Position numbers and translations under genes: made by a program | The notes under the pieces: generated by a model | Databases searched by the model: none | The model's input: only the letters and a program-made list of their open reading frames with translations | What the model was told of the DNA's origin: nothing | Assembly (NCBI GenBank): GCA_011109175.1 | Contig: RDEW01000009.1 | Span: 67,735-131,236 of the forward strand | Direction of reading: 5' to 3' | DNA length: 63,502 bases | Source: Dicyema japonicum | Lineage: Eukaryota > Animalia > Dicyemida | In this document: piece after piece, positions 7,002-61,704 of the stretch | Numbering within the stretch: position 1 is the first letter of the stretch | Layout of the letters: each line of letters begins with the position of its first letter

Positions 7002-7394
7002 CAAGCCGAAAACGAATACTGGAGTCATGAAAAACATCGCCACACATGAATTCAAAAATTTGAAGGAATGAGAACTCTCATTTCTAAATGTTCGCTATCA
7101 TGAGTTTTTTACGATCAGTTCTATAATGAGCAGACAATTATCACGAATTCCAATATCAGAGAATTAGCCAGAGCCACGTGGTTAATAATAGAGATCAGAA
7201 ATATTTACTTAACAAGTTCTGTACATTTCAGTCGAAAATGTTACCTCTGGCACGTGGGTTGAACATTTTTTTCAATCTGACTTGTTTTTCTAATCAATCT
7301 GAAGTCAACTGCAAGTCAAAATTTTAAAAATTGAATTTCACAACCTGGGCACAGATTTAGAAAACCTAGGAATTTAAAGGTTATGACTTTATGC

Positions 7395-9914
7395 CGTGTC
7401 CATTCAAAATGGCCTCCATACAAAACGGCCTCCATTCAAAATGGCCTCCATTCAAAATGGCCTCCATTCAAAATGGCCTCCAATTAATTTTTTCAGGTTT
7501 TGGATAAGTTCATCAATAAACATCACGAGATTTTAGCGAAACGACATCTTTAGGTAAAAAAGTCATCTTTTTTAAATCTTATAAAAATTGATTTACCAAG
7601 GTCCTCGACATCTTTAGGTAAAAAAGTCATCTTTTTTAAATCTTATAAAAATTGATTTTAAGGAGTCCTATGGGTGAGCGGAACATTTTACCAAGGTCCT
7701 CGACATCTTTAGGTAAAAAAGTCATCTTTTTTAAATCTTATAAAAATTGATTTTAAGGGATCCTATGGGTGAGCGGAACATTTTACCAAAGTCCTCCAAA
7801 CCCTATGATTTTAAGATACTAATTGACTTTGGAATAAAAATTAATTATTTTTATTAAAACTAAATTTAATAAGTTATTGTCTCTTTTAATTTCTTTTATT
7901 ATAATAAAACTTTTGAATAATTTAATTAATTAATTGATTCACTATTGCATGCCGTTTCTTGTTAACCAAAAGGGAAATAGAAGTTTAGAACATGATGGAA
8001 ATCTTTATCATTTAAAATACAGGAAGGGACATATCACATATTGGAGGTGCTCAGATCGTACTTGTCCTGGATCTGTAAAAACTATTCAATCCTGTGATGA
8101 AGTTTGGAGTCTGAAGCAACATAATCATCTTCCAAGGAGTGAATTTGTCAAGAGAGCCTTAATACGGGAGGACATAAAGCAGAAATCACTCTTATGTGAT
8201 ATGGGTCCTAGACAGATTATTAATAATTCTCTGCTTGGACAAAATTTGACAACTATTGCTTTGACAGGGACTCATTCTTCTCTGGAACAACTGATTAATA
8301 GAACAAGAAAAAGTATCCCACACGAAAGTGATGATTCAGTTCTTAATATTGAGGAGAATTTAATGTATACCTTACGAGGGCATAGATTCTATCAGTTTGG
8401 ACACAGTTTTCGCCAAAATATTGGTATATTAATGATTAACTTATCAGATGTTGAGACAAATATGGTTATTTTTTTTAATTCTGAAATGACGACACCATTA
8501 AAAAATCATAAAATATGGTCTATTGATGGGACTTTTTCTGTCTGCCCTCTTCCTTGGAAGCAATTATTCACAATATCGGTAATAATTAATCACCATGTAA
8601 TTCCAATAATTTTCTGTCTTTTAACATCAAAAACTGAAAATGAATATGACACAATGCTTCAAATAATTAAACGTCTCATTCCGGATTTAGAACCAAGAGT
8701 TATTGTCTCAGATTTTGAAAAAGGAGCAATAAACTCTTTTCAAAAATCATTTCCAAACGCACGGATAAATTGCTGCATGTTCCATCTAGGACAAAATATT
8801 AATAAAAAAATATTGGAACTAGGAATTTTCAACGACATAAATAATGAAGATATAAATAGGTTAAATGTGATTTAAAATTAACGATAGATTTGTAAAACTG
8901 TTGAAATGCCTCTCCTTTATTCCTACACATACTGTAAAGAACACTTTTGATTGGATAGTGTCGAGATCAGATTTTCCTGTGATTCTAACTCCATTATATC
9001 AATATTTCTTGATCAATTATATCGGAAATCAAGAAAATGGATTAATTCCAAGATTTCCAATTAATTATTGGAATAATCTGGATAATCTATATGAGGACTT
9101 ACCTCGGACAAATAACTCCATTGAAGGCTGGCACAACGTTTTTAGAAGTACATTTGGGACACTAAACAAGACGCCAAGAAATTTTGTAAAGAAATTGATA
9201 AAAGAAGAAGGCATAATGATTAAATTCTTAAGATTACAAAATGGAGAAAAAATTCTTAGAAAAACTAAATATATCGCTTTATCTGAGAATATATTGAGAT
9301 TTGTTCAAGAACAAATATTACTTAATATGGATCCGACAGACTATATATTCAATTTAGTAGAATATGTGTTCTATTAACATTTATAATCATTTTCCTTTTT
9401 TTCTTTTGAAAATAAATATTTCATTTTAAACTTATATAAAAATATTAAAAAAGATGACTTTTTTACCTAAAGATGTCGAGGACCTTGGTAAAATGTTCCA
9501 CTTACCCATAGGACCTGTTAAAATCAATTTTTATAAGATTTAAAAAAGATGACTTTTTTACCTAAAGATGTCGAGGACCTTGGTAAATGTTCCACTTACC
9601 CATAGGACCTGTTAAAATCAATTTTTATAAGATTTAAAAAGATGACTTTTTTACCTAAAGATGTCGAGGACCTTGGTAAAATCAATTTTTATAAGATTTA
9701 AAAAGATGACTTTTTTACCTAAAGATGTCGAGGACCTTGGTAAAATATCTCGTGATGTCTATTGATGAACTTATCCAAAACCTGAGAAATTTAATTGGAG
9801 GCCATTTTGAATGGAGGCCATTTTGAATGGAGGCCGTTTTGAATGGAGGCCAGTTTGAATGGAGGCCATTTTGAATGGAGGCCATTTTGAAAGAGGCCAT
9901 TTTGAATGGGAACC
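7395..9914 (+). mobile_element. Apparently intact MULE (Phantom-like) DNA transposon with modular foldback TIRs
   Basis: 8-bp TSD CTTTATGC (7387-7394, 9915-9922). Inverted ends carry 16-bp CCATTCAAAATGGCCT arrays (5 left, 7 right) plus ~52-bp subterminal repeats (3 left, 4 right). Internal transposase gene. Confidence 0.92.
7949..9377 (+). CDS. FLYWCH-MULE DDE transposase, 458 aa after splicing
   Basis: Exons 7949-8423, 8448-8859 and 8888-9377 total 1377 nt = 459 codons with no internal stop. FLYWCH-like YWRC-x4-C...HNH, IDGTF (D1), VSDFE (D2), CMFH, RTNNSIEGWH (E). Confidence 0.88.
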
Positions 9915-11059
9915 CTTTATGCTGATGTCCCTGGTTTTTCATGGTCAAATTTTCGACGGAAAAATCAAAGAAGTTATCGAGTTCGGTCAAAATTTCGTAT
10001 TTCAAACGCAAAAGCCTTTAAAACTCTCCGATAAGGTCACCTCGAAGCCCATCAAGTTGAGTCACAAAATGTCTCAATTTGTTCAATTTCTTGATTATAA
10101 ACCATTTCCGTACATTCTCGTCAGTTTCGCTGAAAAATGTCTTTTTTTCTGTGCCAGTAGTCATAGTCACGTGTGACTTGTCTACTGGGCCTTTTCGTGA
10201 TCCTTGTTGAGAGCACTTAGTGAAATAGTTAGTAGCGAGCACTTCCCCATTACCATAAGCATATGAATACTTAGGGTTCCGCTTGTGCTGTGCTTTTCAC
10301 TATCCTAGACAAAGTAGATCTGTACCTTCTGTAGAAGGAGATGACTCTACTGGTGTAGCCTATATCGCTCTATTTATGTTGGGGGTAGTTTGCTATTCCT
10401 CGATATAGAGGGGTAAGGCATTGAACAACCGACTGGCATTGAGAAGGGGAATCTAATTGTGTGTAATTAATGACTGAAACAAACATGGTCTTACCTAGGG
10501 CGTTCCAAAATATCAACAGAACCATGTACGGGAAGGTGAGGTACTCGACTAGAAACTCGATGAAGGTTTTTCGGACATGTAATGAGAATAGACATGTAAT
10601 CCTTAGCAAGCGTAATTGTGAATACACTCTTGATTCCATGGAAAAACAGACTTGGACAAAAGATACTCGCTCTCAACACCAACAAGTATGAGGAACACAA
10701 AATCATAAAAAAATTTGACAATTTTATTTTTTATTAAAAATCGTTATTATGTACAATTTTGATGTTGGCAGTCAAAGCAGGTGAAATTTCTGATAACTAT
10801 GCATCGAAAATATGAAGATCTGAATACAAAATGGCCAACAACATACTTGACGGCAGTGGAGCGCTCTATTCAAGTATCTTCTATGTCATCCAATACAGGC
10901 TGGGCTTCTTCTGGAAAATCGTTGTAATCATACAATTGTTTAAAATAAGGGAAAACGTTTATTATTAAAGCACTTTCACGAAAGCCATAATGATTATGCC
11001 CCGCATGTGCAACACTCAAAGAAACAATATTTATAGTTAGTCTTTTCCATCTTCCTTGC

Positions 11060-13800
11060 TGATGTAAGAACACATACACTTGTTGTAGATACCAGTGGTT
11101 GATATTCTACGTGGCCACTCCATTCCGAGTAAGCTTCTTAGTTGCCTTCTATGGAACGAATCCAGTTTCAATAGTTCGTTGAAGGAACTTTCCCCATGTC
11201 CCAGCGTTATACAGTAGGATCGGTTTCACAAACGCGTTGTAAAGCCTGCATCTGATGTCAATTCCAAGTCCTTTGGCCCTTAGCCATCCTTTCTTCAGTT
11301 TAGCCATTGCCGCATTTGCCAGTGTTTTCCTCCTTAGTACATCTTCAGCGTCTCCTAGTAGAGAGCCGAGCTTATTAGTACGTCTCCATCTTTCTTGAGT
11401 AATATCGTCTTCTCTTTTGATTTCCGTAATTTCAGTTTTGTTAACATTTACGCTGAGAAACCATTTCTCAAGCTCCGCAGGTGCATTTTCTAGCAGGTGT
11501 TGGAGTGCGGTCACATCCCGTGATACAAAATCCACATCATCCGCATAAGATGTCTCTTCTATGTCTCCTATATAGCATTTACGGAGGTCGCGGAGTGCAG
11601 ATTCAAGGTATATGGTGAATAGTAAAGGGGAGAGGGAATCACCCTGGGGTGTCCCAATCGTTGTTTTGAAACTGCGGGAAGTTGCTCCTTCTGTCCTCAC
11701 AGATAGTCTTGTGTTCGCAAGTAGTAGTCTGATTATCCTAACCGACGATTCATCCAATATTTGCTCAAGCACATTCATCAGTTTCTGTCTGTTTATTGAG
11801 TCGAAAGCTCTGGAGAGATCTATTCCCAACACGGTTGTTGCGCTCTTGAATCTTTGGTGCGTTGCGCAGCGCCATCTGTGGCTCCATACAATGTCTGCCG
11901 TAGACCTCCCTTCTCGGAACCCACTTTGACTTGCTGGTAGGTATAGATTCGCCATACCCTTTATCCGGCTTAGTGCAATGTTTGCCAGCACCTTGCGTAT
12001 CGAATTCAGAAGTATTATCGGGCGGAGATTTTCTACTGGTCCTTTTGATTTGTTCGGTTTTTGTATGGGTATTAATAATCCATTTCCAAGTCCTAGATCG
12101 GTATTAGTTTCAAAGACGTCATTTAGGGTTTTTGCAATTGTGTCGCTAAGTTTTTTTGGCCCATATTTTAGGAGCTCAGGGCTTATGTTGTCCGGCCCAG
12201 CACTCTTGTTGTTCTTCAGTTTATTTATCGCTAATTCCACCTCTTCCACTGTGATTGGGATTTTTAGCGCCTTTGCTTTTCCTTGGAAAGGGGGAAAGTC
12301 ATTATTTTCTTTATTCAACAGTGTTTCGAAGTGTCGTGCAATCAATTCTGCTTTTTCTTTCGGGTTACCCACGAATTTTCCATCTTTGTCTTTGATGTGA
12401 AGGATGTTTTGTCCTTTCTTTGTCCGCAGCAGCCGCAAAGCCGCATACATCCTTGAATTGTCTTTTACATTCCACATCTTTTAATAGGGATGTAATAATT
12501 TCCCGTGAATGTTTTCTGTTCATCTTTTTGATTTTCCACTTTAGTTCCCTTTGTTGGATATTAAGCTCTTTTTTTTACTCTCGTCTGACGTGTTTGCCGC
12601 TTTTAGTCGTAGCTCTCTGCAATGCTTTGCCATATTTGGCACGTTCGGGTGGTGATCCAATTTTAGGGCGTGATGATTTCGGACTCCAAGGCATATTTTG
12701 GCCGACTTGGAGATTGCCTGTTTTGTTTGATCCCACAGAGTTCGTACTGATGATTCCGGTGCGGTTTTCACCATAAGAGTCTCGATTTGTTCGTGATATT
12801 TAGCTCTACAAGTTGGCTCTAACCACAATTTTTCTGTCTGAAAGTATATATTGGGTCTTTGTCTCGCCTTCTTCGCGTTTTCAATGTATTTTTTCCCAGT
12901 CAGGTGCTTTTTTACACAAAGTTTTGCAATGACGATCCTGTGGTCGCTGTCGGTTGTTGTTCCCTGGTAGGAACGTGCATCATTTATCAGGTGTTTATCA
13001 GACTTTCGGCAGATAATGTAGTCGATTTGATTATATATATTCACGGTCTCTCCGACAGAGTTTTTTCTTTGTCCGTGCCACGTCGTCTTGTGGCAAGCTG
13101 AGTGCGTAAAGGCCGTGTTGCACAGGAAAAGGCTATTTCGCCTCGCAGAAGTTTACCAGAGAGGCTCCAGATGCATTTCTCCTTCCGCGCCCGTGTCTTC
13201 CAATAGAGGATTCTTCGGGCCCCATTCGCATTCCGGCCTTTGCATTCATATCTCCCGCAACAAAGACAAGAGACGAGGAAGCATTGTTAGAGTATGTGCT
13301 TGATAGTTCTGAGTAGAATTCCTCGAGTTCACTGGGGTTCTTGATTACTCGTCCACAGTGTGGTGCATAGACATTTATGACGGTTAGTAGACTCTTGGAC
13401 GGGCATAGTTCATTTAGTTTGACTTGTAGGACACATATTCGGTCGTTGACTCTCCAAAGCGATATAATTTTTTGAGGTAATCCACGTGTAGGGCAAATCT
13501 TATGCCGTAGTGCTTGCATTCAGTTGGGAAGAGAATCAGTCGGTAGTTGTTCCATGTCTCATCGCGTCCATTTTCGATTTTCGTCTCTTGTAGGCAGCCA
13601 ATAGATATTTTGTATTTCTCAAGATCGTCACAAAGTACTTTCCTTGTCCAATCTTTCGATATTCCACGTACGTTGAACGTCATTAGCCTGAGTTCTCGAT
13701 TGTATGATGAGTGTTTTTCAGACATTTTTCTTAACCGTTGTACAGAGAAGAAACGAGGCACGTCACCACCTCACCAACAAACGTTTAATGTTGGAAAACG
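11060..13800 (-). mobile_element. RTE-like LINE, near full length (APE + RT), frameshifted
   Basis: APE motifs TFNVRG, CLQETK, NVYAPH, GDMNAK, DSDHR. RT motifs GTPQGDSLSP and YADD. Split over ORFs 13414-13761, 13133-13519, 12541-13044 and 11149-12477. Confidence 0.9.
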
Positions 13801-22313: not shown

Positions 22314-23749
22314 CAGGGTTTTCCTATTTATTTAATAACTTTGTCATAAAATTTAATAACTTTGTCAAAAAATTTAATAACTTCGTCATAAATTTAATAA
22401 CTTTGTCAAAATGTTTAATAATTCGTCAAAATACTTAATAACTTTGTCAAAATGTTTAATAACTTTGTCAAAATGTTTAATAACTTTGTCATAATGTTTA
22501 ATAACTTTGTAAAGATTATTATTTATATTTTTGGGATTATTATTTATATTTTTGGGATCATTATTTATATTTATTGGATCATTATTTATATTTATTGGAT
22601 CATATCGTCAAAAAATACAAAAATACAGGAAGTTTTTGCTTCAACAAAAAATAATTGTGGACGAAAGAAAAAACTTAATTCATCGGACATCTTATTTTTG
22701 ACTAAAAAAAATTGAAGAAGATGCTTCATTTACTCTGAAGAATTTAAAAAATTCTTTATTTGATGTGCAAAGAAAAAATGTCTCTTTATCGACAATAAAT
22801 AGGACGCTAGATACATTTGGATATAGTTTTAAAAAGATTCAATTTGTACCTATGGCGAGAAATTCTACAATAAATATGGAAGAAAGATCTGCCAGAAAAA
22901 TAATTGAAGTTGATAATCAACGGCTTATTTTTATAGACGAAATGGGAGTCAATTGTTTGATGAGATCCAAATTTGGAAAATCTATAAAAGGAGTTACTTC
23001 GAAAAAATGTACTAGAAACACAAGAGAGAAAAATTTCTCTATTTGTGCTGCTATTTCTGTGGACGGCCTTTTACATTACGGAATCAATTCTCTTATCGCG
23101 CGGAGACGTTCATTGATTTTGTAATACAGCTTAATTATAAGCTTGAACATGCAGGGAAAAAAAGTATGGTTATATATTATATTTAAGACATGGTATTGAT
23201 ATGTGACAATGCATCAATTCACAAGAGCGAACAATTAAAAAAATGTTGTATTCGGAACTGGTATCCAATTAATTTTTAACGTGTATAGGGTATGAATTGT
23301 ATTTTTTGCCTCCTTATTCTCCTCCATTTTATCCAAATTAAGAGTTTTTTTCTGTTTGAAAAAATAACATCGAAAAGAAAAAATTGTAGGAACTCTGAGG
23401 AATTAATAATCGCAATACAAAACATCGGAGAAATTCCATCAGATGTGTGAAATAATTTGTTATAGCCACATGCGGAAATATTTAGTTAAAGCATTGGCTA
23501 ATGAAGAATTTTAATTTATAGTTGTTTTTTTCAATTAATTATAAAAATTGGTTTCTTTTAATTTGACCTTTGACAAAGTTATTAAACATTTTGACAGAGT
23601 TATTAAGTATTTTGACGAATTATTAAACATTTTGACAAAATTATTAAATTTTATGACAAAGTTATTAAATTTTATGACAAAGTTATTAAATTTTTTGACA
23701 AAGTTATTAAATTTTATGACAAAGTTATTAAATAAATAGGAAAACCCTG
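22314..23749 (+). mobile_element. Tc1/IS630-type DNA transposon, copy 1 (N-terminal coding deletion)
   Basis: TA|CAGGGTTTTCC...GGAAAACCCTG|TA. ~190-bp TIRs made of 21-bp arrays. FIDEMG, CDNASIH and LPPYSP motifs. Introns at 23164-23187 and 23261-23288. Confidence 0.92.
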
Positions 23750-48400: not shown

Positions 48401-49056
48401 CTCAATTTGCTTTTGGTAATTTATCCCCAGCAGCGGCTGAGACCCAAGCTTCTCAATCATGGGTATGATAGGGTGATGGCATTTTGCTTAGGTTTGGGTT
48501 CTTCTTGGAAATGTAGTATTTCTCAGGGAAAACTTGCCAAGAGCATATATACAGACCATTACACTAAAGAAAACTCTTGAAAGTATGTGTTGACTAAACA
48601 TGGAATTAAAATTCAAGATAGCGAAATTTTCCCAGATGATTTATTTTTTTCCTGATCATGAGACGGAGAAATGGAAATTTAATGACGAAGCTTTGGATGA
48701 GAATACATATCCTCACAATATTTCTGATAAAACCGAGGAACAGGAGGACTATGAAATGATCCCCACTGAGACTGATAATGTGCTTGAAAATTCGAACAAT
48801 GAGCTAGAGACGAGTGATGGAAAAAAAGATCTTGGGAATTGACCAATCCTGGAGCCAAAAGAAGATGTTAAGCTTTGTTTACTCTTAATTAGATGTTAAT
48901 TAGTTTTCTAATAAAAATGGGCACTATTTATCATCGACCCGCCATAAGAACAGGAATCATGCAGTAGGGGTTTGTCCTTAGTCCCACAAATGTAGTCAAT
49001 TTGAATGTATATTTTGACACTTTCGTTTGACTCCTGTAGCGACTGAATATATAAAG

Positions 49057-51345
49057 GGTTCCCATTCAAAATGGCCTCCAATTAATTTTCTCAGGTTGTG
49101 GATAAGTTCATCAATAAACATCACGAGATAATTTACCAAAGTCCTCGACATCTTTAGGTAAAAAAGTCATCTTTTTTAATATTTTTATTTAACTTTGAAA
49201 TGAAAGATTTATTTTCAAAAGGAAAAAAATAATTATAAATGTTAGTAGAAAATAAATTCAACTAAATTGAATATATATTCTATCGGATCCATATTAAGTA
49301 ACATTGTTCTTAAACAAATCTTAGTATATTCTCAGATAAAGCGATATATTTAGTTTTTCTAAGAATTTTTCTCCATTTTGTAATCTTAAGAATTGTATCA
49401 TTATGCCTTCTTTATCAATGTGGTATGTCCTCATATAAATTATCCAGATTATTCCAATAATTAATTGCAAATCTTGGAATTAATTAATTTTCTTGATTTC
49501 CGATATAATTGATCAAAAAATATTGATATAATGAATTTAGAATCGCAGGAATATCTGATCTCGACACTATCTAATCCAGAGGTTGTCAAACGGTGTGCCG
49601 CCTGCCAAATACAAATTTGAATAAATTTATATACATTTTTTGACCTAATTAATTTAAAAAGATAAATAAATTAAAATAATCATTTTTTATTATATATTAA
49701 ATGACATTTACATTGGTTAACCATTATTTAATAATTTTTTAATAACGTGCGCATCAACGGTTATGGGTAAATCAGTTCGTCTGTCTTATAAAGATTCTTA
49801 TTTGTCATTTGGATTTATATGCATAGATAAAAATAAACTACCTAAATGTCTAATTTGCATGGAAGTTTGGCAAATGATGCTATGGTTCCTAGCAAACTAA
49901 AGAGACATTTTACTTCCAAGCATCCGGACTATTCCGAAAAATCTGTGGATTATTTTATCCATTTGAAAAAACAACACAAGTATTATTTAGTTTTTACTAT
50001 GAATCGCAGATCTAGTCAAATGATGTTCAGTGAAACTTTTGTAAACACAAAGGAATCATTGAAATGTTCATACCTGATCTGAGAATTGATAGCAAAACAA
50101 CTAAAACCTCACACTATTGGTGAAAACTTGATAATCCCTGCTTGTCGTATTATTGCTCGGACAATGTTTGGTCTTAAATATGAACAAAAAATTAAAGAAA
50201 CTCGTTTTCATTACAACTTGATGAATCCACGGATATTGGTTTATTTTATATTTTAATTATAATAAGGATATAATGGTGAATTGTTACAGGGACTGATTAA
50301 TGAACATTTAATAATTTTGGAAAACAAAATGGATGCTTATTTTCCAGACTTAGAAATTGGAAAATTCGATTGGGTTATTGTTTTTTAAATATTTTTTAGA
50401 TACGAAATCCTTTTCTTGTGTCAGAATCAAAACACTTATCTGTTAAAGAAAATGAAGAACTTATTGCACTGTTTAATGATCGATCCTTAAAATTAATGAT
50501 GACGGAGTTAGACATTGGAGAATTCTGGATATATATTCGAAACATATATCCCAGTTTATCAAAACAAGCAATGACCATAATTTTACAGTTTTCAACGACC
50601 TATTTATGCGAAACAGGTTTTTCTACGATGCATAATATGAAATATAACAAACGTGAAAGTTTGAGAAACATTGATGCTGAAATGCGGGTGGCTTTGTCAA
50701 CCATTCGACCTGATATTGATGATATATGCAAAAACAATAATAATTAAGATTTCATTTCTATTATTAATAAAAATTTGGGCATTAAATTACCAATTTTTTA
50801 CTTAGTTTTACACATCTTAAAAATTTAATTTTTTAATGTGTGCCGTGGATTATTTTTTTTACGATTAGTGTGCCGCGGGAATTATTTTTTGAAAAGCTCT
50901 GATCTAATCAAAAGTGTTCTATACAGTATGTACAGGAATAAAAGAAAGGCATTTCGACAGTTTTACAAATCTATCGTTATTTTAAATCACATTTAACTTA
51001 TTTATGTCGTTGAAAAGTTCTAACTCCAATATTTTTTTGTTAATTTTTATCCTATATGGAACATGCAGCAATTTATCCGTGCGTTTGGAAATGACTTTTG
51101 AAAAAAGTTTATTGCTCCTTTTTAAAAATCTGAAACAATAACTCTTGGTTCTTAATCCGGAATGAGACGTTTAATTATTTAAAGCATTGTGTCATCAGGT
51201 ACGACCTGAGCACCTCCAATATGTGCTTTGTCCCTTCCTGTATTTTAAATGGTGCAGATTTTAAACTAGATTTACCTATTGGTTAACGAGAAACGGCATG
51301 CAATAGTGAATCAATTAAATAAAATATTCAAAAGTTTTATTAAAA
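49057..51345 (-). mobile_element. MULE copy 2, internally deleted, one end lost, carrying a hAT insertion
   Basis: Begins ggttcccattcaaaatggcc. Antisense transposase pieces align with 7950-9377. Retains a 27-nt version of the second intron (50971-50997). Confidence 0.88.
49577..50901 (+). mobile_element. Buster/Charlie-type hAT, internally deleted, nested in MULE copy 2
   Basis: TIRs CAGAGGTTGTCAAA / CAGAGCTTTTCAAA. 8-bp TSD ATCTAATC (49569-49576, 50902-50909). LANDAMVPSKLKRH and FSTTYLCETGFS dimerisation motif. Confidence 0.93.
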
Positions 51346-54919: not shown

Positions 54920-57265
54920 ATGGAAATTCCTTCACTATATGCTCATTGCATGAAAACTATTCGAGAATACATTAATGGGACAAATTATCAAGCATTAAGC
55001 GAAAAAACTAAAAAAATGATTTCTAAAAGATTATCAGAAGATCCAAGTTATTTAGAATATCTATTTGCCGGTGAAAATCGAAAAGAACAATATTCACGTA
55101 TATACAAATTCCAGATGTAGTACATAAGAATATTTTCTGCGTTAAATTGATAAATGAAAAAGTTGACATTAAAGATGTTGTCAGGATGATTCAAGTTTAT
55201 CCGAATTTATCGAATATTAAAATATGGCAAATAACTTCAACAGAAAAGCAGCCTTTACTACCATTTTCACCTAATAACGTCAAATCATTCTCACTTCTAG
55301 AATATAATGACCCAGATTTGTTACATTCCCTATTTATGACTGGATTTAACAAAATAACATGCCTTGAACTTTTTCATGACGAACGTGAAGTGTCAGTAAT
55401 CCTTAAAAGTACCACATTGAAAATAATGGAGAAACTGGAACGCATAGAATTATCTAACGTTATGATTATCGACTTTGAAGAATTTTTGGCAAACCTAAAC
55501 AGTCCAGAGTCCTTGTGGTTTGTTTTTTTATAATTCAGTCATTTTGCACTCGTGCATACTGGACTTTGGAATCGTAGAAGGTTGGATGTGAACGATATAT
55601 GTTGTCTTTTTGAAAAAGCAAAGAACCTTACTTTTCTAGATTTATCAAAGTCTCTTATCGATGTACAAAGACTCAAATAGTAATTTATTTTAATAATCTT
55701 AGTCAAATGCTGAAATACGGATTGAACAAACATCAAGATGAGAATACCTTATTTTTCATTCAAAATATAAACGAATGGGTAAATCTGAGAAAATAAAATA
55801 GATTGATCGAGAATTGGCATTAAATAACTTAGCCAGGTTTGTTGTAACTACAAGAACTATTGGATGAAACAATCTGTAAGTTTCGCAATAAGAAACTTCG
55901 AAATAACTTTCTAAATCGATTTTTGAGAGTATTTTGAAAATATTATTGTAGATTTTATATCATAAATATAACGTCAAAGATTATAGATACCCGCGTTATT
56001 CTATGTAACTTATTATATTACTTCAGAAATATTCTAAATCATATTACCAAAACACACGATATTTCGTATTTTAATCGTCGGTATGAGTTGATCTTATTCG
56101 TAGTTTAATTTATGATATTTTTCTCATTGTTCTTATGTTTTGCATATGTAATAGAAAATTGGTAATTGAGATTTTAAATTTGTAGCATATTGCTCTTGAT
56201 TGTTCAAATTTATTATTCAATTTAAAACCATGGAATACGCCAATTTTCGTTGATTACTTTTTATTTTAGATCAATGCGTTGTCATGCATGTTTATTGCAA
56301 TAGCTACATCTCCCGACCCTAATAATAGAATATATAAAAACTGTCGATTTGTCATGAAACGTTTAAATATCGGATTTTTATCTTATTTTGGGCATTCTGG
56401 ACTTGTCAAAGTTTAAAATTTTGTATTTTTAGTACTGCCTTGAATGTATCAAAACATTATCTGTCGGAGTTGGTGGGTTTCTATTTATATTGGGCTGGCT
56501 ATTAGGTATTTGAAATACGTTTAGTTAGACGAAAATAAAATGAATGTGAATTTGTTTATTGATTTTGGCGGAATTGAAATTATTTGTCATATTGATGATA
56601 GATCCCGGTTCAAAAATTCCAACTTAAAGATTATGCTTTCACTCGTTGAAATTGCGGAAAATCTTGCTAAATTCCCGAAATCTAGACGTTTACTGGGGGC
56701 TTGTAGACTCGTAGAATTTTTATTGTAAACTTGTTAACTTATTAAAAAGGATCCAACTTACGACAATTGGGAATTCTATCTGCCCTATAGAATCAGGCGG
56801 TGCATGTGTATTTTATTGAGTGATTCTCATATTTCCCCTACATTTATAAATTTGGATATAGGTGATATGAGCCCCCGAGAAATGATTCTAGATAAAATTT
56901 TTCAATTTGTAAATAAATATACTTTTGCAGGATGTCATGATATTATTGAATGTGATGCTGATAGAAGGTTATTCCATTTTATATGTAAGGTCGTTTATGT
57001 CAACAGTAAATCTATTATGCGTAAACACAGATGAGCGAATTTGGCTTTGGGCTGTGTGGGAATGTGCTAATATATCATTTACATCTCGTTAATATTTATT
57101 TTTATAATAGCAAATGTACTTATGTTCAAATTGATGGACTATTATATTCTTCCGAAAATTAGCAATGTATGTATAAAATCTAAAATGGAAGAGATCCATC
57201 ACTATTTTTGGACTTTTAGAATAAATTACTTTGTTGCTATTTTTATAATTTTAGGAATTCATTAG
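54920..57265 (+). CDS. ZYG-11/ZER1-family protein (BC-box, LRR-like, armadillo-like); intactness unresolved
   Basis: N-terminal PSLYAHCMKTI fits the BC-box SLxxxCxxxI. LTFLDLS. After splicing: GWLLDENKMNVNLFIDFGG...IAE and FHFILNLL...LWAVW, matching ZYG-11/ZER1 C-terminal motifs as recalled. Twelve GT-AG introns of 21-24 nt restore frame. Junctions near 55114, 55845 and 56725 are ambiguous. Confidence 0.78.
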
Positions 57266-61120: not shown

Positions 61121-61704
61121 GTGTTTCCTTTCAAAATGGCCTCCAATTAATTTTCAAGTTTTAGACAGGTTCATCAAAACCATTACGAGATTTACCAAAA
61201 AAGACATCCTTAGATAAAAAATTCATCTTTTAAATCTTATAAACATTGATTTTAGTGAGTACTCAACATTTTACCAAGGTCTTTCAAATTTTTAGAACAA
61301 ATGTTACTTAACAAGAATCCGACAGAATATATATTCAATTTAATAGAATATGTATTCTATTAACTTTTTTAATTATTTTACTATTTTCCTGTTTAAAATA
61401 AATCATTCATTCTAAAGCTGTATGAAAATAAAAATATTAAAAAGACGACATTTTACTTAAAGATGTCGAGGATCTTGTTAAAATGGTCTACATACCCATT
61501 AAAATCAAATTTTTATTAGATTTAAAAAAGATGACTTTTTACCTAAAGATGTCGAGGACCTTGGTAAACTGTTCAATTTACCAATATGACCCATCAAAAT
61601 CAATTTTGTAATATTTAAAAAGATGACTTTTCTATCTAAGGATGTCTTTTTGGTAAAATCTCGTGATAGTCTTGATGAATTGTAGGCCACTTTGAATGGA
61701 CACG
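61121..61704 (+). mobile_element. Non-autonomous MULE derivative (~580 bp)
   Basis: Both degenerate TIR types plus only the last transposase codons (..NPTEYIFNLIEYVFY*). No clear TSD. Confidence 0.82.

What the first reader, a model, noticed from the sequence alone, without database searches (positions are those of the whole stretch)
7949..9377. MULE transposase with host-style miniature introns: a possible splice-controlled transposase/repressor switch
Seen: two GT-AG introns, 8424-8447 (24 nt, in frame, stop-free) and 8860-8887 (28 nt), both containing TTAAC. Splicing both gives a clean 458-aa ORF. Retaining the 28-nt intron stops translation at 8873-8875, leaving FLYWCH, D1 and D2 but not the catalytic E (RTNNSIEG). 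The decayed second copy keeps this intron at 27 nt with GT/AG intact (50971-50997). Known: retention of the last P-element intron yields a repressor in Drosophila soma. Inference: ultrashort-intron retention could act as a tissue- or stage-specific brake on this apparently intact element.
Basis: partly seen in the sequence, partly recalled or inferred. Interest (0 to 1): 0.82.

Follow-up and report, generated by a model that had tools for sequence, protein, structure and literature searches.

The report
Jumping gene with two tiny introns
This is an intact-looking, high-copy MULE "cut-and-paste" jumping gene, probably of the octopus parasite Dicyema japonicum, whose enzyme gene has picked up two 24- and 28-base introns of the host's ultra-short type; the idea that leaving the second one in acts as a brake is possible but nothing tested here supports it.

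Summary
A 2.5-kb FLYWCH+MULE DNA transposon lies at about 7395-9914, with roughly 400-470-bp repeat-rich inverted ends. Its transposase reads as 458 aa only if 8424-8447 (24 nt) and 8860-8887 (28 nt) are removed.

Both segments are GT..AG-bounded, 21% G+C and contain TTAAC. Both are exactly the extra DNA relative to relatives: 14 homologues (434-492 aa full-length ORFs plus the N-terminally short 362-aa P0005) have no gap at either junction. So they are lineage-specific micro-introns, inferred from comparison rather than seen in RNA.

All four reachable runs are genomic DNA. They show a very high-copy family with many deletion derivatives, no copy lacking either segment, and an excess of synonymous differences between copies.

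Relatives from marine metagenomes carry micro-introns at other sites. One shared site lies only 20 nt downstream of intron 2. A Tc1-like element in this window has 24- and 28-nt candidates, and earlier scan notes report the same for Buster hAT elements on other DNA of this genome. Micro-intron gain in transposase genes therefore looks general here.

Retaining intron 2 would give a zinc finger plus RNase-H core without the catalytic Glu. A regulated P-element-like switch is untested, and I rate it at about 7%.

The parts
7387..7394 (.). Candidate 8-bp target-site duplication CTTTATGC (left)
   Evidence: Same 8-mer at 9915-9922, read. Uncertain, because the right end of copy 2 also continues ...GGGAACCCTTTAT.
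7395..7796 (+). Left terminal inverted repeat, about 400 bp, containing 16-nt and 95-nt tandem sub-repeats
   Evidence: the repeat finder: arms 7399-7534/9744-9879 (94%), 7591-7734/9445-9588 (97%), 7687-7796/9478-9587 (95%); direct-repeat families D3 and D4.
7797..7948 (+). AT-rich leader / presumed promoter and 5' UTR
   Evidence: Lies between the inner TIR end and the ATG. No transcript data.
7949..8423 (+). Exon 1: FLYWCH zinc finger and helical linker (codons 1-158 plus the first base of codon 159)
   Evidence: Pfam FLYWCH 4.8e-9. Collinear with homologues.
8424..8447 (+). Micro-intron 1: 24 nt, GT..AG, phase 1, in frame and stop-free, TTAAC at 8436-8440
   Evidence: Exactly the 8 residues missing in all homologues (7, 14). 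21% G+C against 31% in the exons.
8448..8859 (+). Exon 2: RNase-H-like core with D185, D247 and C268xxH271
   Evidence: Pfam MULE 1.8e-14; invariant columns; strands 190-276 in the model of homologue P0009.
8860..8887 (+). Micro-intron 2: 28 nt, GT..AG, phase 2 (AG|A), TTAAC at 8878-8882. If retained, stop at 8873-8875.
   Evidence: Its removal restores the frame and a gap-free junction against 14 homologues. It is the only GT..AG pair I found by eye that does so; the two frames overlap open only at 8871-8872. Kept as 27 nt in copy 2.
8888..9377 (+). Exon 3: all-helical C-terminal domain with catalytic E375 (RTNNSIEGWH), then stop TAA
   Evidence: 48-57% identical to the C-terminal ORFs P0038, P0039 and P0040. 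E375 invariant in 15/15 sequences.
9411..9416 (+). AATAAA, candidate polyadenylation signal 34 nt after the stop
   Evidence: Read. Conserved in copies 2 and 3.
9445..9914 (-). Right terminal inverted repeat with the same sub-repeats
   Evidence: the repeat finder, families D1 and D2; inverted pairs I1-I4.
9915..9922 (.). Candidate 8-bp target-site duplication CTTTATGC (right)
   Evidence: Same caveat as the left copy.
49051..51342 (-). Copy 2: decayed deletion derivative. It lacks the equivalent of 8065-8645, has stops and indels, and is split by a roughly 1.3-kb hAT-like insertion flanked by the 8-bp duplication GATTAGAT.
   Evidence: blastn (83-95% identity); alignments.
50971..50997 (-). 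Intron 2 of copy 2: 27 nt, GT and AG kept, one base deleted inside
61126..61700 (+). Copy 3: MITE-like remnant (TIR sub-repeats plus the last ~70 nt of the ORF and the 3' UTR)
   Evidence: blastn (81-94% identity).

Best explanation
An autonomous Mutator-like (MULE) DNA transposon of the FLYWCH-finger type, most probably in Dicyema japonicum. Its single transposase gene has acquired two spliceosomal introns of the host's ultra-short kind (24 and 28 nt).

Inferred mechanism: the host spliceosome removes both introns. Removal of the 28-nt intron is obligatory, because it breaks the frame. The result is a 458-aa DDE transposase (FLYWCH DNA-binding finger, helical linker, RNase-H core with D185/D247, C-terminal helical domain with E375). 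This enzyme cuts and pastes the element through its long repeat-rich TIRs, probably making an 8-bp target duplication.

Shown here: the anatomy; that the introns are absent from relatives; that the family is high-copy, carries the introns in all copies seen, and has diverged with an excess of synonymous changes. Inferred, not shown: splicing itself, current activity, and any effect of retention. I take occasional retention to be ordinary splicing noise rather than a regulated switch.
For: Anatomy:
- Pfam FLYWCH and MULE domains.
- TIRs 94-97% complementary.
- 8-bp direct repeat at both ends.

Introns judged by comparison:
- The spliced 458-aa product aligns over 407-458 residues with 13 uninterrupted full-length ORFs of 434-492 aa, and over 354 residues with the 362-aa P0005. 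There is no gap at either junction; the only difference is a 1-aa gap eight residues before junction 2.
- Locus L002 reads through both sites in one frame.
- In the tree, the window sits in a 99/97-supported clade that holds both intron-less and intron-bearing members, with intron-less outgroups. The introns are therefore derived.

Host style:
- Only D. japonicum and myxobolids have introns this short. Their signals are reduced to GTa...AG plus upstream A residues (PMC13644364).
- A host gene in the window shows GT..AG segments of 21-28 nt, among longer predicted ones.

The family needs these copies:
- In four DNA libraries there are hundreds to thousands of unitigs over the gene. Many internal-deletion joints are listed, some at depths as low as 7-15.
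- No joint 8423>8448 or 8859>8888 appears, so no intron-less DNA copy was seen.

Selection:
- 16 of 34 listed coding variants between copies are synonymous, against 20% expected (p = 4e-4).
- Among the common variants the count is 14 of 24 (p = 5e-5).

Fold:
- The AF2 model of homologue P0009 has pLDDT 87.5.
- It matches the ISCth4/IS256 transposase, integrase cores, Hermes and a FLYWCH domain.
Against: - No RNA evidence at all. The only runs reachable are DNA (Nextera mate-pair adaptors, even cover of non-coding flanks).
- Logan contigs show presence, not absence, so a rare intron-less master copy cannot be excluded.
- The synonymous excess is clear for exons 1-2 (10 of 19) but weak for exon 3 alone (6 of 15, p = 0.06). 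One common variant in exon 3 is a stop codon (Q436*).
- The variant list was truncated by the tool (16 variants not shown).
- Intron 1 is in frame and stop-free, and it lies in a loop that tolerates insertions in P0024 and P0032. It could simply be translated.
- The 5' site of intron 2 is GTT, not the GTa consensus.
- The exact element ends and the target duplication are ambiguous.
Confidence: 0.72

Rival explanations
1. P-element-like switch. Splicing of the 28-nt intron is controlled by cell type or life stage. Retention yields a roughly 300-aa protein (FLYWCH finger, linker and RNase-H sheet, but no catalytic Glu) that still binds the TIR sub-repeats and represses transposition.
For: - The truncated product would keep the whole DNA-binding part and end just after the RNase-H core. 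This is analogous to the 66-kDa P repressor made by IVS3 retention (PMC7776569).
- The donor is GTT rather than GTa, so it may be weak.
- An independent 30-33-nt intron in relatives L001, L004, L005 and L006 lies only 20 nt downstream, and on retention would truncate at almost the same point.
- The TIRs carry many tandem sub-repeats that could titrate a DNA-binding fragment.
Against: - No RNA data and no protein data.
- Any frame-breaking intron gives a truncated product when retained, so the anatomy does not discriminate between the readings.
- Micro-introns lie at several other positions in relatives, and candidates occur in an unrelated Tc1-like element. This fits unselected gain.
- With about five intron positions in the clade, one pair falling within 20 nt has roughly a 25% chance (my estimate).
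- GTT donors also occur among the predicted introns of a host gene.
Confidence: 0.07
2. Pseudogene. The 28 nt is a disabling insertion that is never spliced. This copy, and the family, are dead or are moved by some other transposase source. The GT..AG ends are coincidence.
For: - No spliced RNA has been seen.
- Copy 2, copy 3 and many unitigs are deletion derivatives.
- A stop variant (Q436*) is common among copies.
- Purifying selection on exon 3 alone is not significant.
Against: - Both flanking ORFs are fully open; exon 3 staying open by chance is 8e-7.
- The insert is exactly GT..AG-bounded, AT-rich and TTAAC-bearing, like the second one 412 nt upstream. Joint chance is about 1e-4.
- The insert is shared by a copy that is 12% diverged and by every unitig laid. 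The family therefore amplified while carrying it, and copies differ mainly at synonymous sites.
- Relatives have same-site GT..AG inserts of different sequence and length (30-33 nt), the signature of real introns.
Confidence: 0.12
3. Only intron 2 is an intron. The 24-nt segment is an in-frame 8-residue insertion (GILMINLS) that is translated as part of a surface loop.
For: - It is in frame and stop-free.
- It maps to a loop before the first core strand, with lower model confidence.
- P0024 and P0032 have insertions at that point.
Against: - Exact GT..AG ends.
- 24 nt is within the host's intron range.
- 21% G+C against 31% in the exons.
- TTAAC lies 8 nt before the AG, as in intron 2.
- The segment is absent from all 14 homologues.
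Confidence: 0.2

Closest known systems
Phantom/Muta-type animal MULEs (Mutator superfamily), e.g. Muta1 of Aedes aegypti; classification of Dupeyron et al. 2019 (PMC6446971)
   Same: A single transposase ORF with an N-terminal FLYWCH (WRKY-GCM1 type) finger and a DDE core with CxxH. Long TIRs and a target duplication within the 8-11 bp range. MULEs of this kind are greatly expanded in parasites such as myxozoans (bioRxiv 10.64898/2026.02.11.705288).
   Different: I did not place the window's protein in a tree with named Phantom references, so the sub-family is not assigned. Its nearest relatives are unnamed metagenome ORFs and microsporidian proteins, at 26-59% identity. The transposase gene has two ultra-short introns that all intron-less relatives lack.
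Drosophila P element IVS3 retention (66-kDa repressor)
   Same: A DNA transposon whose last intron, if retained, truncates the transposase to an N-terminal DNA-binding fragment that lacks the catalytic part.
   Different: A different superfamily (THAP/P versus FLYWCH/MULE). For P, tissue-specific control, the exonic silencer and repressor activity are all demonstrated (PMC7776569). Here none of them is tested, and the intron is 28 nt.
Maize MuDR mudrA (own knowledge, not checked here: three introns, with retention of the third reported to give a shorter MURA form, Hershberger et al. 1995)
   Same: Same superfamily. A transposase gene with spliceosomal introns of host type, and possible retention isoforms.
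   Different: Plant-size introns at other positions, and a two-gene element (mudrA/mudrB).
Related MULE locus L006 (ENA metagenome GARB21-1, scaffold_1203) and its kin L001, L004, L005
   Same: Same clade (48% identity). L006 is intact but for one 30-nt GT..AG micro-intron with a TATAAC motif. The 313-aa + 150-aa ORF pair mirrors the window's 313 + 158.
   Different: That intron sits in the Cys codon of KC|LSFIP, 20 nt downstream of the window's intron 2. There is no intron at the window's two sites, and the host is unknown.
Bacterial IS256-family transposase ISCth4 (PDB 6xgx/6xg8)
   Same: Best full-length structural match of the homologue model (TM 0.31-0.37, probability 1.0). IS256 is the prokaryotic counterpart of Mutator.
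   Different: No FLYWCH finger, no introns, about 11% identity.

Membership tests
MULE / Mutator superfamily DNA transposon | Transposase with the MULE DDE domain (D, D, CxxH, E) | tested here: met
   Pfam PF10551, 1.8e-14, 54.4 bits against a cutoff of 27.6. D185, D247, C268, H271 and E375 are invariant in 15/15 sequences. RNase-H fold in the model of homologue P0009.
MULE / Mutator superfamily DNA transposon | Long terminal inverted repeats | tested here: met
   Arms of 110-144 nt at 94-97% complementarity within roughly 400-470-bp terminal regions.
MULE / Mutator superfamily DNA transposon | Target-site duplication of 8-11 bp (PMC6446971) | tested here: inconclusive
   CTTTATGC flanks both ends (7387-7394 and 9915-9922). 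However, copy 2 shares CCTTTAT after its right end, so the true terminus is uncertain.
MULE / Mutator superfamily DNA transposon | N-terminal zinc-finger DNA-binding domain (WRKY-GCM1/FLYWCH class in several animal MULEs) | tested here: met
   Pfam PF04500, 4.8e-9. Foldseek match of the homologue model to FLYWCH structure 2rpr, TMt 0.75.
Spliceosomal micro-introns of the host (D. japonicum type) | GT..AG ends, length about 20-30 nt, AT-rich, A-rich or branch-like motif shortly before the AG | tested here: met
   24 and 28 nt, GT..AG, 21% G+C, TTAAC 6-8 nt before the AG. Host features taken from PMC13644364 and from the host gene.
Spliceosomal micro-introns of the host (D. japonicum type) | Removal restores a conserved, collinear protein | tested here: met
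   No gap at either junction against 14 homologues.
Spliceosomal micro-introns of the host (D. japonicum type) | Spliced out in RNA | not testable with these tools
   The four runs that hold the sequence are DNA libraries, and no RNA run was served.
P-element-like splice-controlled transposase/repressor switch | Cell-type- or stage-specific retention of the intron | not testable with these tools
   No RNA data reachable.
P-element-like splice-controlled transposase/repressor switch | Retention product keeps the DNA-binding domain and loses catalysis | tested here: met
   A stop at 8873-8875 leaves residues 1-295 plus RLNVI. That keeps FLYWCH, D185, D247 and CxxH and loses E375. This follows from the sequence only; no protein has been shown.
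P-element-like splice-controlled transposase/repressor switch | Truncated protein represses transposition; a cis-acting splicing silencer is present | not testable with these tools
   Needs binding and excision assays.

The most novel reading that the evidence does not exclude
Retention of the frame-breaking micro-intron is a selected brake. Two independent micro-introns, the window's at codon 296 and the one shared by relatives L001, L004, L005 and L006 20 nt downstream, both sit at the boundary between the RNase-H core and the Glu-bearing helical domain. Each MULE lineage would then make a FLYWCH-bearing, catalytically dead TIR-binder whenever splicing is withheld. This would be a P-element-like soma/germline or stage switch, evolved convergently in an animal of about 30 cells with the shortest introns known.
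Probability: 0.07. Interest if true: 0.8.

Novelty: new member of a known kind. Interest (0 to 1): 0.4.

Why it matters
Transposase genes with host-type introns, and intron retention as a transposon brake, are both known (P element, MuDR, Ac). The element itself is therefore a new member of a known kind.

What is worth keeping is the wider pattern. In a genome whose splice signals are reduced to GTa...AG within 20-30 nt, a MULE here and, as candidates, a Tc1-like element carry micro-introns; earlier scan notes report the same for Buster hAT elements. Relatives of this MULE in unknown marine hosts carry micro-introns at at least three other positions.

A high-copy transposon family has datable copies, so it would be a convenient system for asking how and how fast new spliceosomal introns arise. 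It could also show whether minimal splice signals let small insertions be "intronised" instead of killing the gene. Only RNA data can show whether retention has been put to use.

Tried and rejected
1. RNA test. The look-up of sequencing runs served only runs of one 2019 sample. Read laying (the single call allowed) showed these to be DNA: Nextera mate-pair junction adaptors in loose ends, equal cover of the non-coding leader, and 350-1700 short unitigs. This matches the libraries described for D. japonicum in PMC6736024. There is therefore no splice evidence either way. I laid only 7790-9450 to keep the TIR repeats out of the call, so the element ends were not examined in reads.

2. Origin of the introns by tandem duplication of flanking exon. 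Local alignments against 80 nt on each side were no better than shuffles. One 15/17 match of intron 1 (reverse strand) to the left TIR region reached 5/300 shuffles, which is not significant after 12 tests.

3. A cleaner host-intron set from the ZYG11-like gene, with introns capped at 36 nt. No stop-free path was found, so I relied on the looser path and on PMC13644364.

4. Solved structures by sequence: nothing.

5. Looking up the metagenome samples in papers. Only SRR10156264 was found, listed in an Antarctic deep-sea microbial dataset paper. The hosts of the related loci remain unknown.

6. Alternative splice pairs for intron 2. By eye, the only other GT (8867) gives a 21-nt segment that does not restore the frame.

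7. Considered and rejected: a ciliate-type genetic code (the ORF has no internal TAA/TAG and ends in TAA), and a programmed frameshift (the two frames overlap open for only 2 nt, and the 28 nt are extra relative to all homologues).
Full report
**1. What is there**

The region 7949-9377 holds two open frames. ORF 7934/7949-8875 and an ORF in another frame, 8901(8889)-9377, are separated by a stop at 8873-8875.

Pfam finds a FLYWCH zinc finger (aa 3-60, E = 4.8e-9) and the MULE transposase domain (aa 189-283, E = 1.8e-14) in the first ORF. It finds nothing in the second.

The gene lies between long inverted terminal regions, about 7395-7796 and 9445-9914. Their arms are 94-97% complementary, and they are built from 16-nt and 64/95-nt tandem sub-repeats.

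An 8-bp direct repeat, CTTTATGC, flanks the two ends (7387-7394 and 9915-9922). The right end of a second copy also continues with CCTTTAT, so I treat the exact terminus and the target duplication as probable, not settled. AATAAA lies 34 nt after the stop.

**2.

- 8424-8447 is GTATATTAATGATTAACTTATCAG (24 nt, in frame, no stop).
- 8860-8887 is GTTAAATGTGATTTAAAATTAACGATAG (28 nt).
- Both contain TTAAC shortly before the AG.
- Joining the three exons gives 1377 nt, that is 458 codons plus stop.
- The decayed second copy keeps the second segment as 27 nt with GT and AG at 50971-50997.

**3. Are they introns? Comparative evidence**

The word-indexed protein search found only distant relatives, at 41-59% identity. 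All seven of them lack exactly the eight residues encoded by 8424-8447 (alignment A1).

A second search, started from the homologue P0005, found many full-length relatives encoded by single uninterrupted ORFs of 434-492 aa. Aligned with these and with the 362-aa P0005, 14 homologues in all, the spliced window protein is collinear over 354-458 residues. There is no gap at either splice junction. The only difference nearby is a one-residue gap in a variable loop eight residues before junction 2.

Locus L002 (a 13-kb ENA contig) reads through both sites in one frame. The two segments are thus precisely the DNA that this family has and its relatives lack.

Each segment can be placed in only two (intron 1) or five (intron 2, flanked by ATAG on both sides) equivalent ways. 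One placement of each is GT..AG. I estimate the joint chance for random inserts at roughly 1e-4.

Other sequence features agree:
- The segments are 21% G+C against 31% for the exons.
- Exon 3's 163 codons would stay open by chance with p = 8e-7 at this composition.
- The two frames overlap open for only two bases (8871-8872), so a simple frameshift reading does not fit either.

**4. Host and host style**

Earlier notes of this scan name Dicyema japonicum. My own checks are indirect but consistent:
- Only D. japonicum and myxobolid myxozoans have introns this short (PMC13644364).
- The window's G+C (about 36%) matches D. japonicum (36.7%), not Henneguya (29%).
- The window is full of LINEs and other repeats, as described for D. 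japonicum, where repeats make up 49% of the genome (PMC6736024).
- The reachable 2019 runs carry Nextera mate-pair junction adaptors, as in that genome project.

PMC13644364 reports that the splice signals of D. japonicum are reduced to GTa at the 5' end and AG at the 3' end, with a few A residues upstream. Both segments fit this, although intron 2 starts GTT.

A host gene in the window (ZYG11-like, 54920-57265) yields stop-bridging GT..AG segments of 21-28 nt, among longer predicted ones. Some of them start GTT.

**5. What the reads show**

The single read-laying run showed that X1-X4 are genomic DNA. No RNA test was therefore possible. The DNA is still informative:
- 350-1700 short unitigs per run lie on 1.66 kb, more than half of them at least 99% alike.
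- Summed word depths are very large, so the family is high-copy and at least partly young.
- Many joints are internal deletions (8156>8549, 8059>9002, 8179>8968 and others), or TIR sequence abutting internal sequence. These are non-autonomous derivatives.
- No joint 8423>8448 or 8859>8888 was listed in any run, although joints of depth 7-15 were. No intron-less DNA copy was seen, with the caveat that contigs show presence, not absence.

Of the 34 coding variants listed among copies, 16 are synonymous against 20% expected (p = 4e-4). Of the common ones, 14 of 24 are synonymous (p = 5e-5). The signal is weak for exon 3 alone (6 of 15, p = 0.06), and one common variant there is a stop.

Copy 2 (49051-51342, minus strand) is 83-95% identical across its blastn segments (about 12% diverged over the intron-2 region). 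It is internally deleted and is split by a hAT-like insertion with an 8-bp duplication, yet it shares intron 2. The family therefore amplified and diversified while carrying the introns, largely under purifying selection. That requires a functional, and hence spliced, transposase. This last step is inference.

**6. Relatives also have micro-introns, at other places**

- L003 has a 28-nt GT..AG segment just after the FLYWCH domain. Its removal restores frame and collinearity.
- L001 has a 31-nt GT..AG segment after NYIG.
- L001, L004, L005 and the otherwise intact L006 share a 30-33-nt AT-rich insert, of differing sequence, in phase 1 of the Cys codon of KC|LSFIP. It is GT..AG-bounded in L004, L005 and L006. 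In the decayed L001 the frame needs 32 nt removed, while the GT..AG pair spans 33. This site lies 20 nt downstream of the window's intron 2.
- None of these loci has an intron at the window's two sites.

In a maximum-likelihood tree the window falls in a 99/97-supported clade with these loci. The same clade holds the intron-less L002 and P0009 and proteins of the microsporidian Enterospora canceri. The outgroup clades are all uninterrupted ORFs. The introns are therefore gains within this clade. The order inside the clade is unresolved, so the number of independent gains is a minimum read from positions, not from the tree.

In the same window a Tc1-like transposase has candidate 24- and 28-nt GT..AG segments around the exon with its second Asp. 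Earlier notes report three micro-introns in Buster hAT elements elsewhere in this genome (not re-tested by me).

**7. What retention would do**

D185, D247, C268/H271 and E375 are invariant.

An AlphaFold model of homologue P0009 (pLDDT 87.5) shows the finger, a helical linker, a five-stranded RNase-H core (strands 190-276) and a C-terminal all-helical domain, with the Glu on helix 382-394. Foldseek matches it to the IS256-family transposase ISCth4, retroviral integrase cores, Hermes and a FLYWCH domain.

Intron 1 maps to a loop before the first core strand. Retaining it would add eight residues. Intron 2 maps to the start of the first helix after the core. Retaining it gives residues 1-295 plus RLNVI, which has DNA binding and the sheet with both Asp but no Glu. 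This is formally like the 66-kDa P-element repressor (PMC7776569).

Any frame-breaking intron does this, however, and nothing here speaks to regulation. That two independent introns lie 20 nt apart at this domain boundary is suggestive. With about five positions known it is not improbable by chance (about 25% by my estimate).

**8. Verdict**

The reading as host-type, lineage-specific micro-introns in an intact-looking, high-copy MULE is well supported by comparison but not verified in RNA (confidence 0.72).

The regulated transposase/repressor switch remains a hypothesis with no supporting data (0.07). A dead pseudogene reading is at 0.12.

The more robust point of interest is the apparent repeated gain of micro-introns by transposase genes in ultra-short-intron hosts.

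Noticed in passing
window 22765-23450 (+): A Tc1/IS630-like transposase with candidate micro-introns 23164-23187 (24 nt) and 23261-23288 (28 nt, with TTTAAC). They flank the exon that encodes ...CDNASIHKSE... (second catalytic Asp).
   Followed up: partly
window 49584-50894, inside MULE copy 2: A roughly 1.3-kb hAT-like element inserted into the decayed MULE copy, flanked by the 8-bp duplication GATTAGAT. Its coding pieces also look interrupted by short AT-rich segments.
   Followed up: no
L006 1678-1707 (ENA GARB21-1 scaffold_1203): An otherwise intact related MULE (48% identity) with a single 30-nt GT..AG segment containing in-frame stops, in the Cys codon of KC|LSFIP. The same site is occupied in L001, L004 and L005 by 30-33-nt segments of different sequence. 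The host is unknown.
   Followed up: partly
L007 about 1019-1090 (JGI 3300034975): A tandem duplication of about 46 nt covering the RFVKLLKC-coding stretch, in another related copy, at the same hot-spot region as the introns.
   Followed up: no
P0004, P0011, P0040: The same MULE clade occurs in assemblies of microsporidian parasites of crustaceans (Enterospora canceri, Cucumispora dikerogammari). The other relatives come from marine metagenomes, one run of which is listed in an Antarctic deep-sea dataset. This hints at horizontal spread among marine parasites, or at contamination.
   Followed up: no
window 7399-7503 and 9774-9932: The outer part of each TIR is an array of 6-8 copies of a 16-nt unit (TTTGAATGGAGGCCAT and its complement), and the inner part holds 64/95-nt repeats. 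These are likely multiple transposase-binding sites.
   Followed up: no
window 11149-13761 (-): A LINE-type retrotransposon (reverse transcriptase and endonuclease ORFs) lies immediately downstream of the MULE. The neighbourhood of the finding is made of transposons, not host genes.
   Followed up: no
window 9306 (variant among copies): About a quarter of the family's depth in run X2 carries C>T at 9306, which turns Gln436 into a stop. A sizeable subfamily therefore encodes a transposase lacking the last 23 residues.
   Followed up: no
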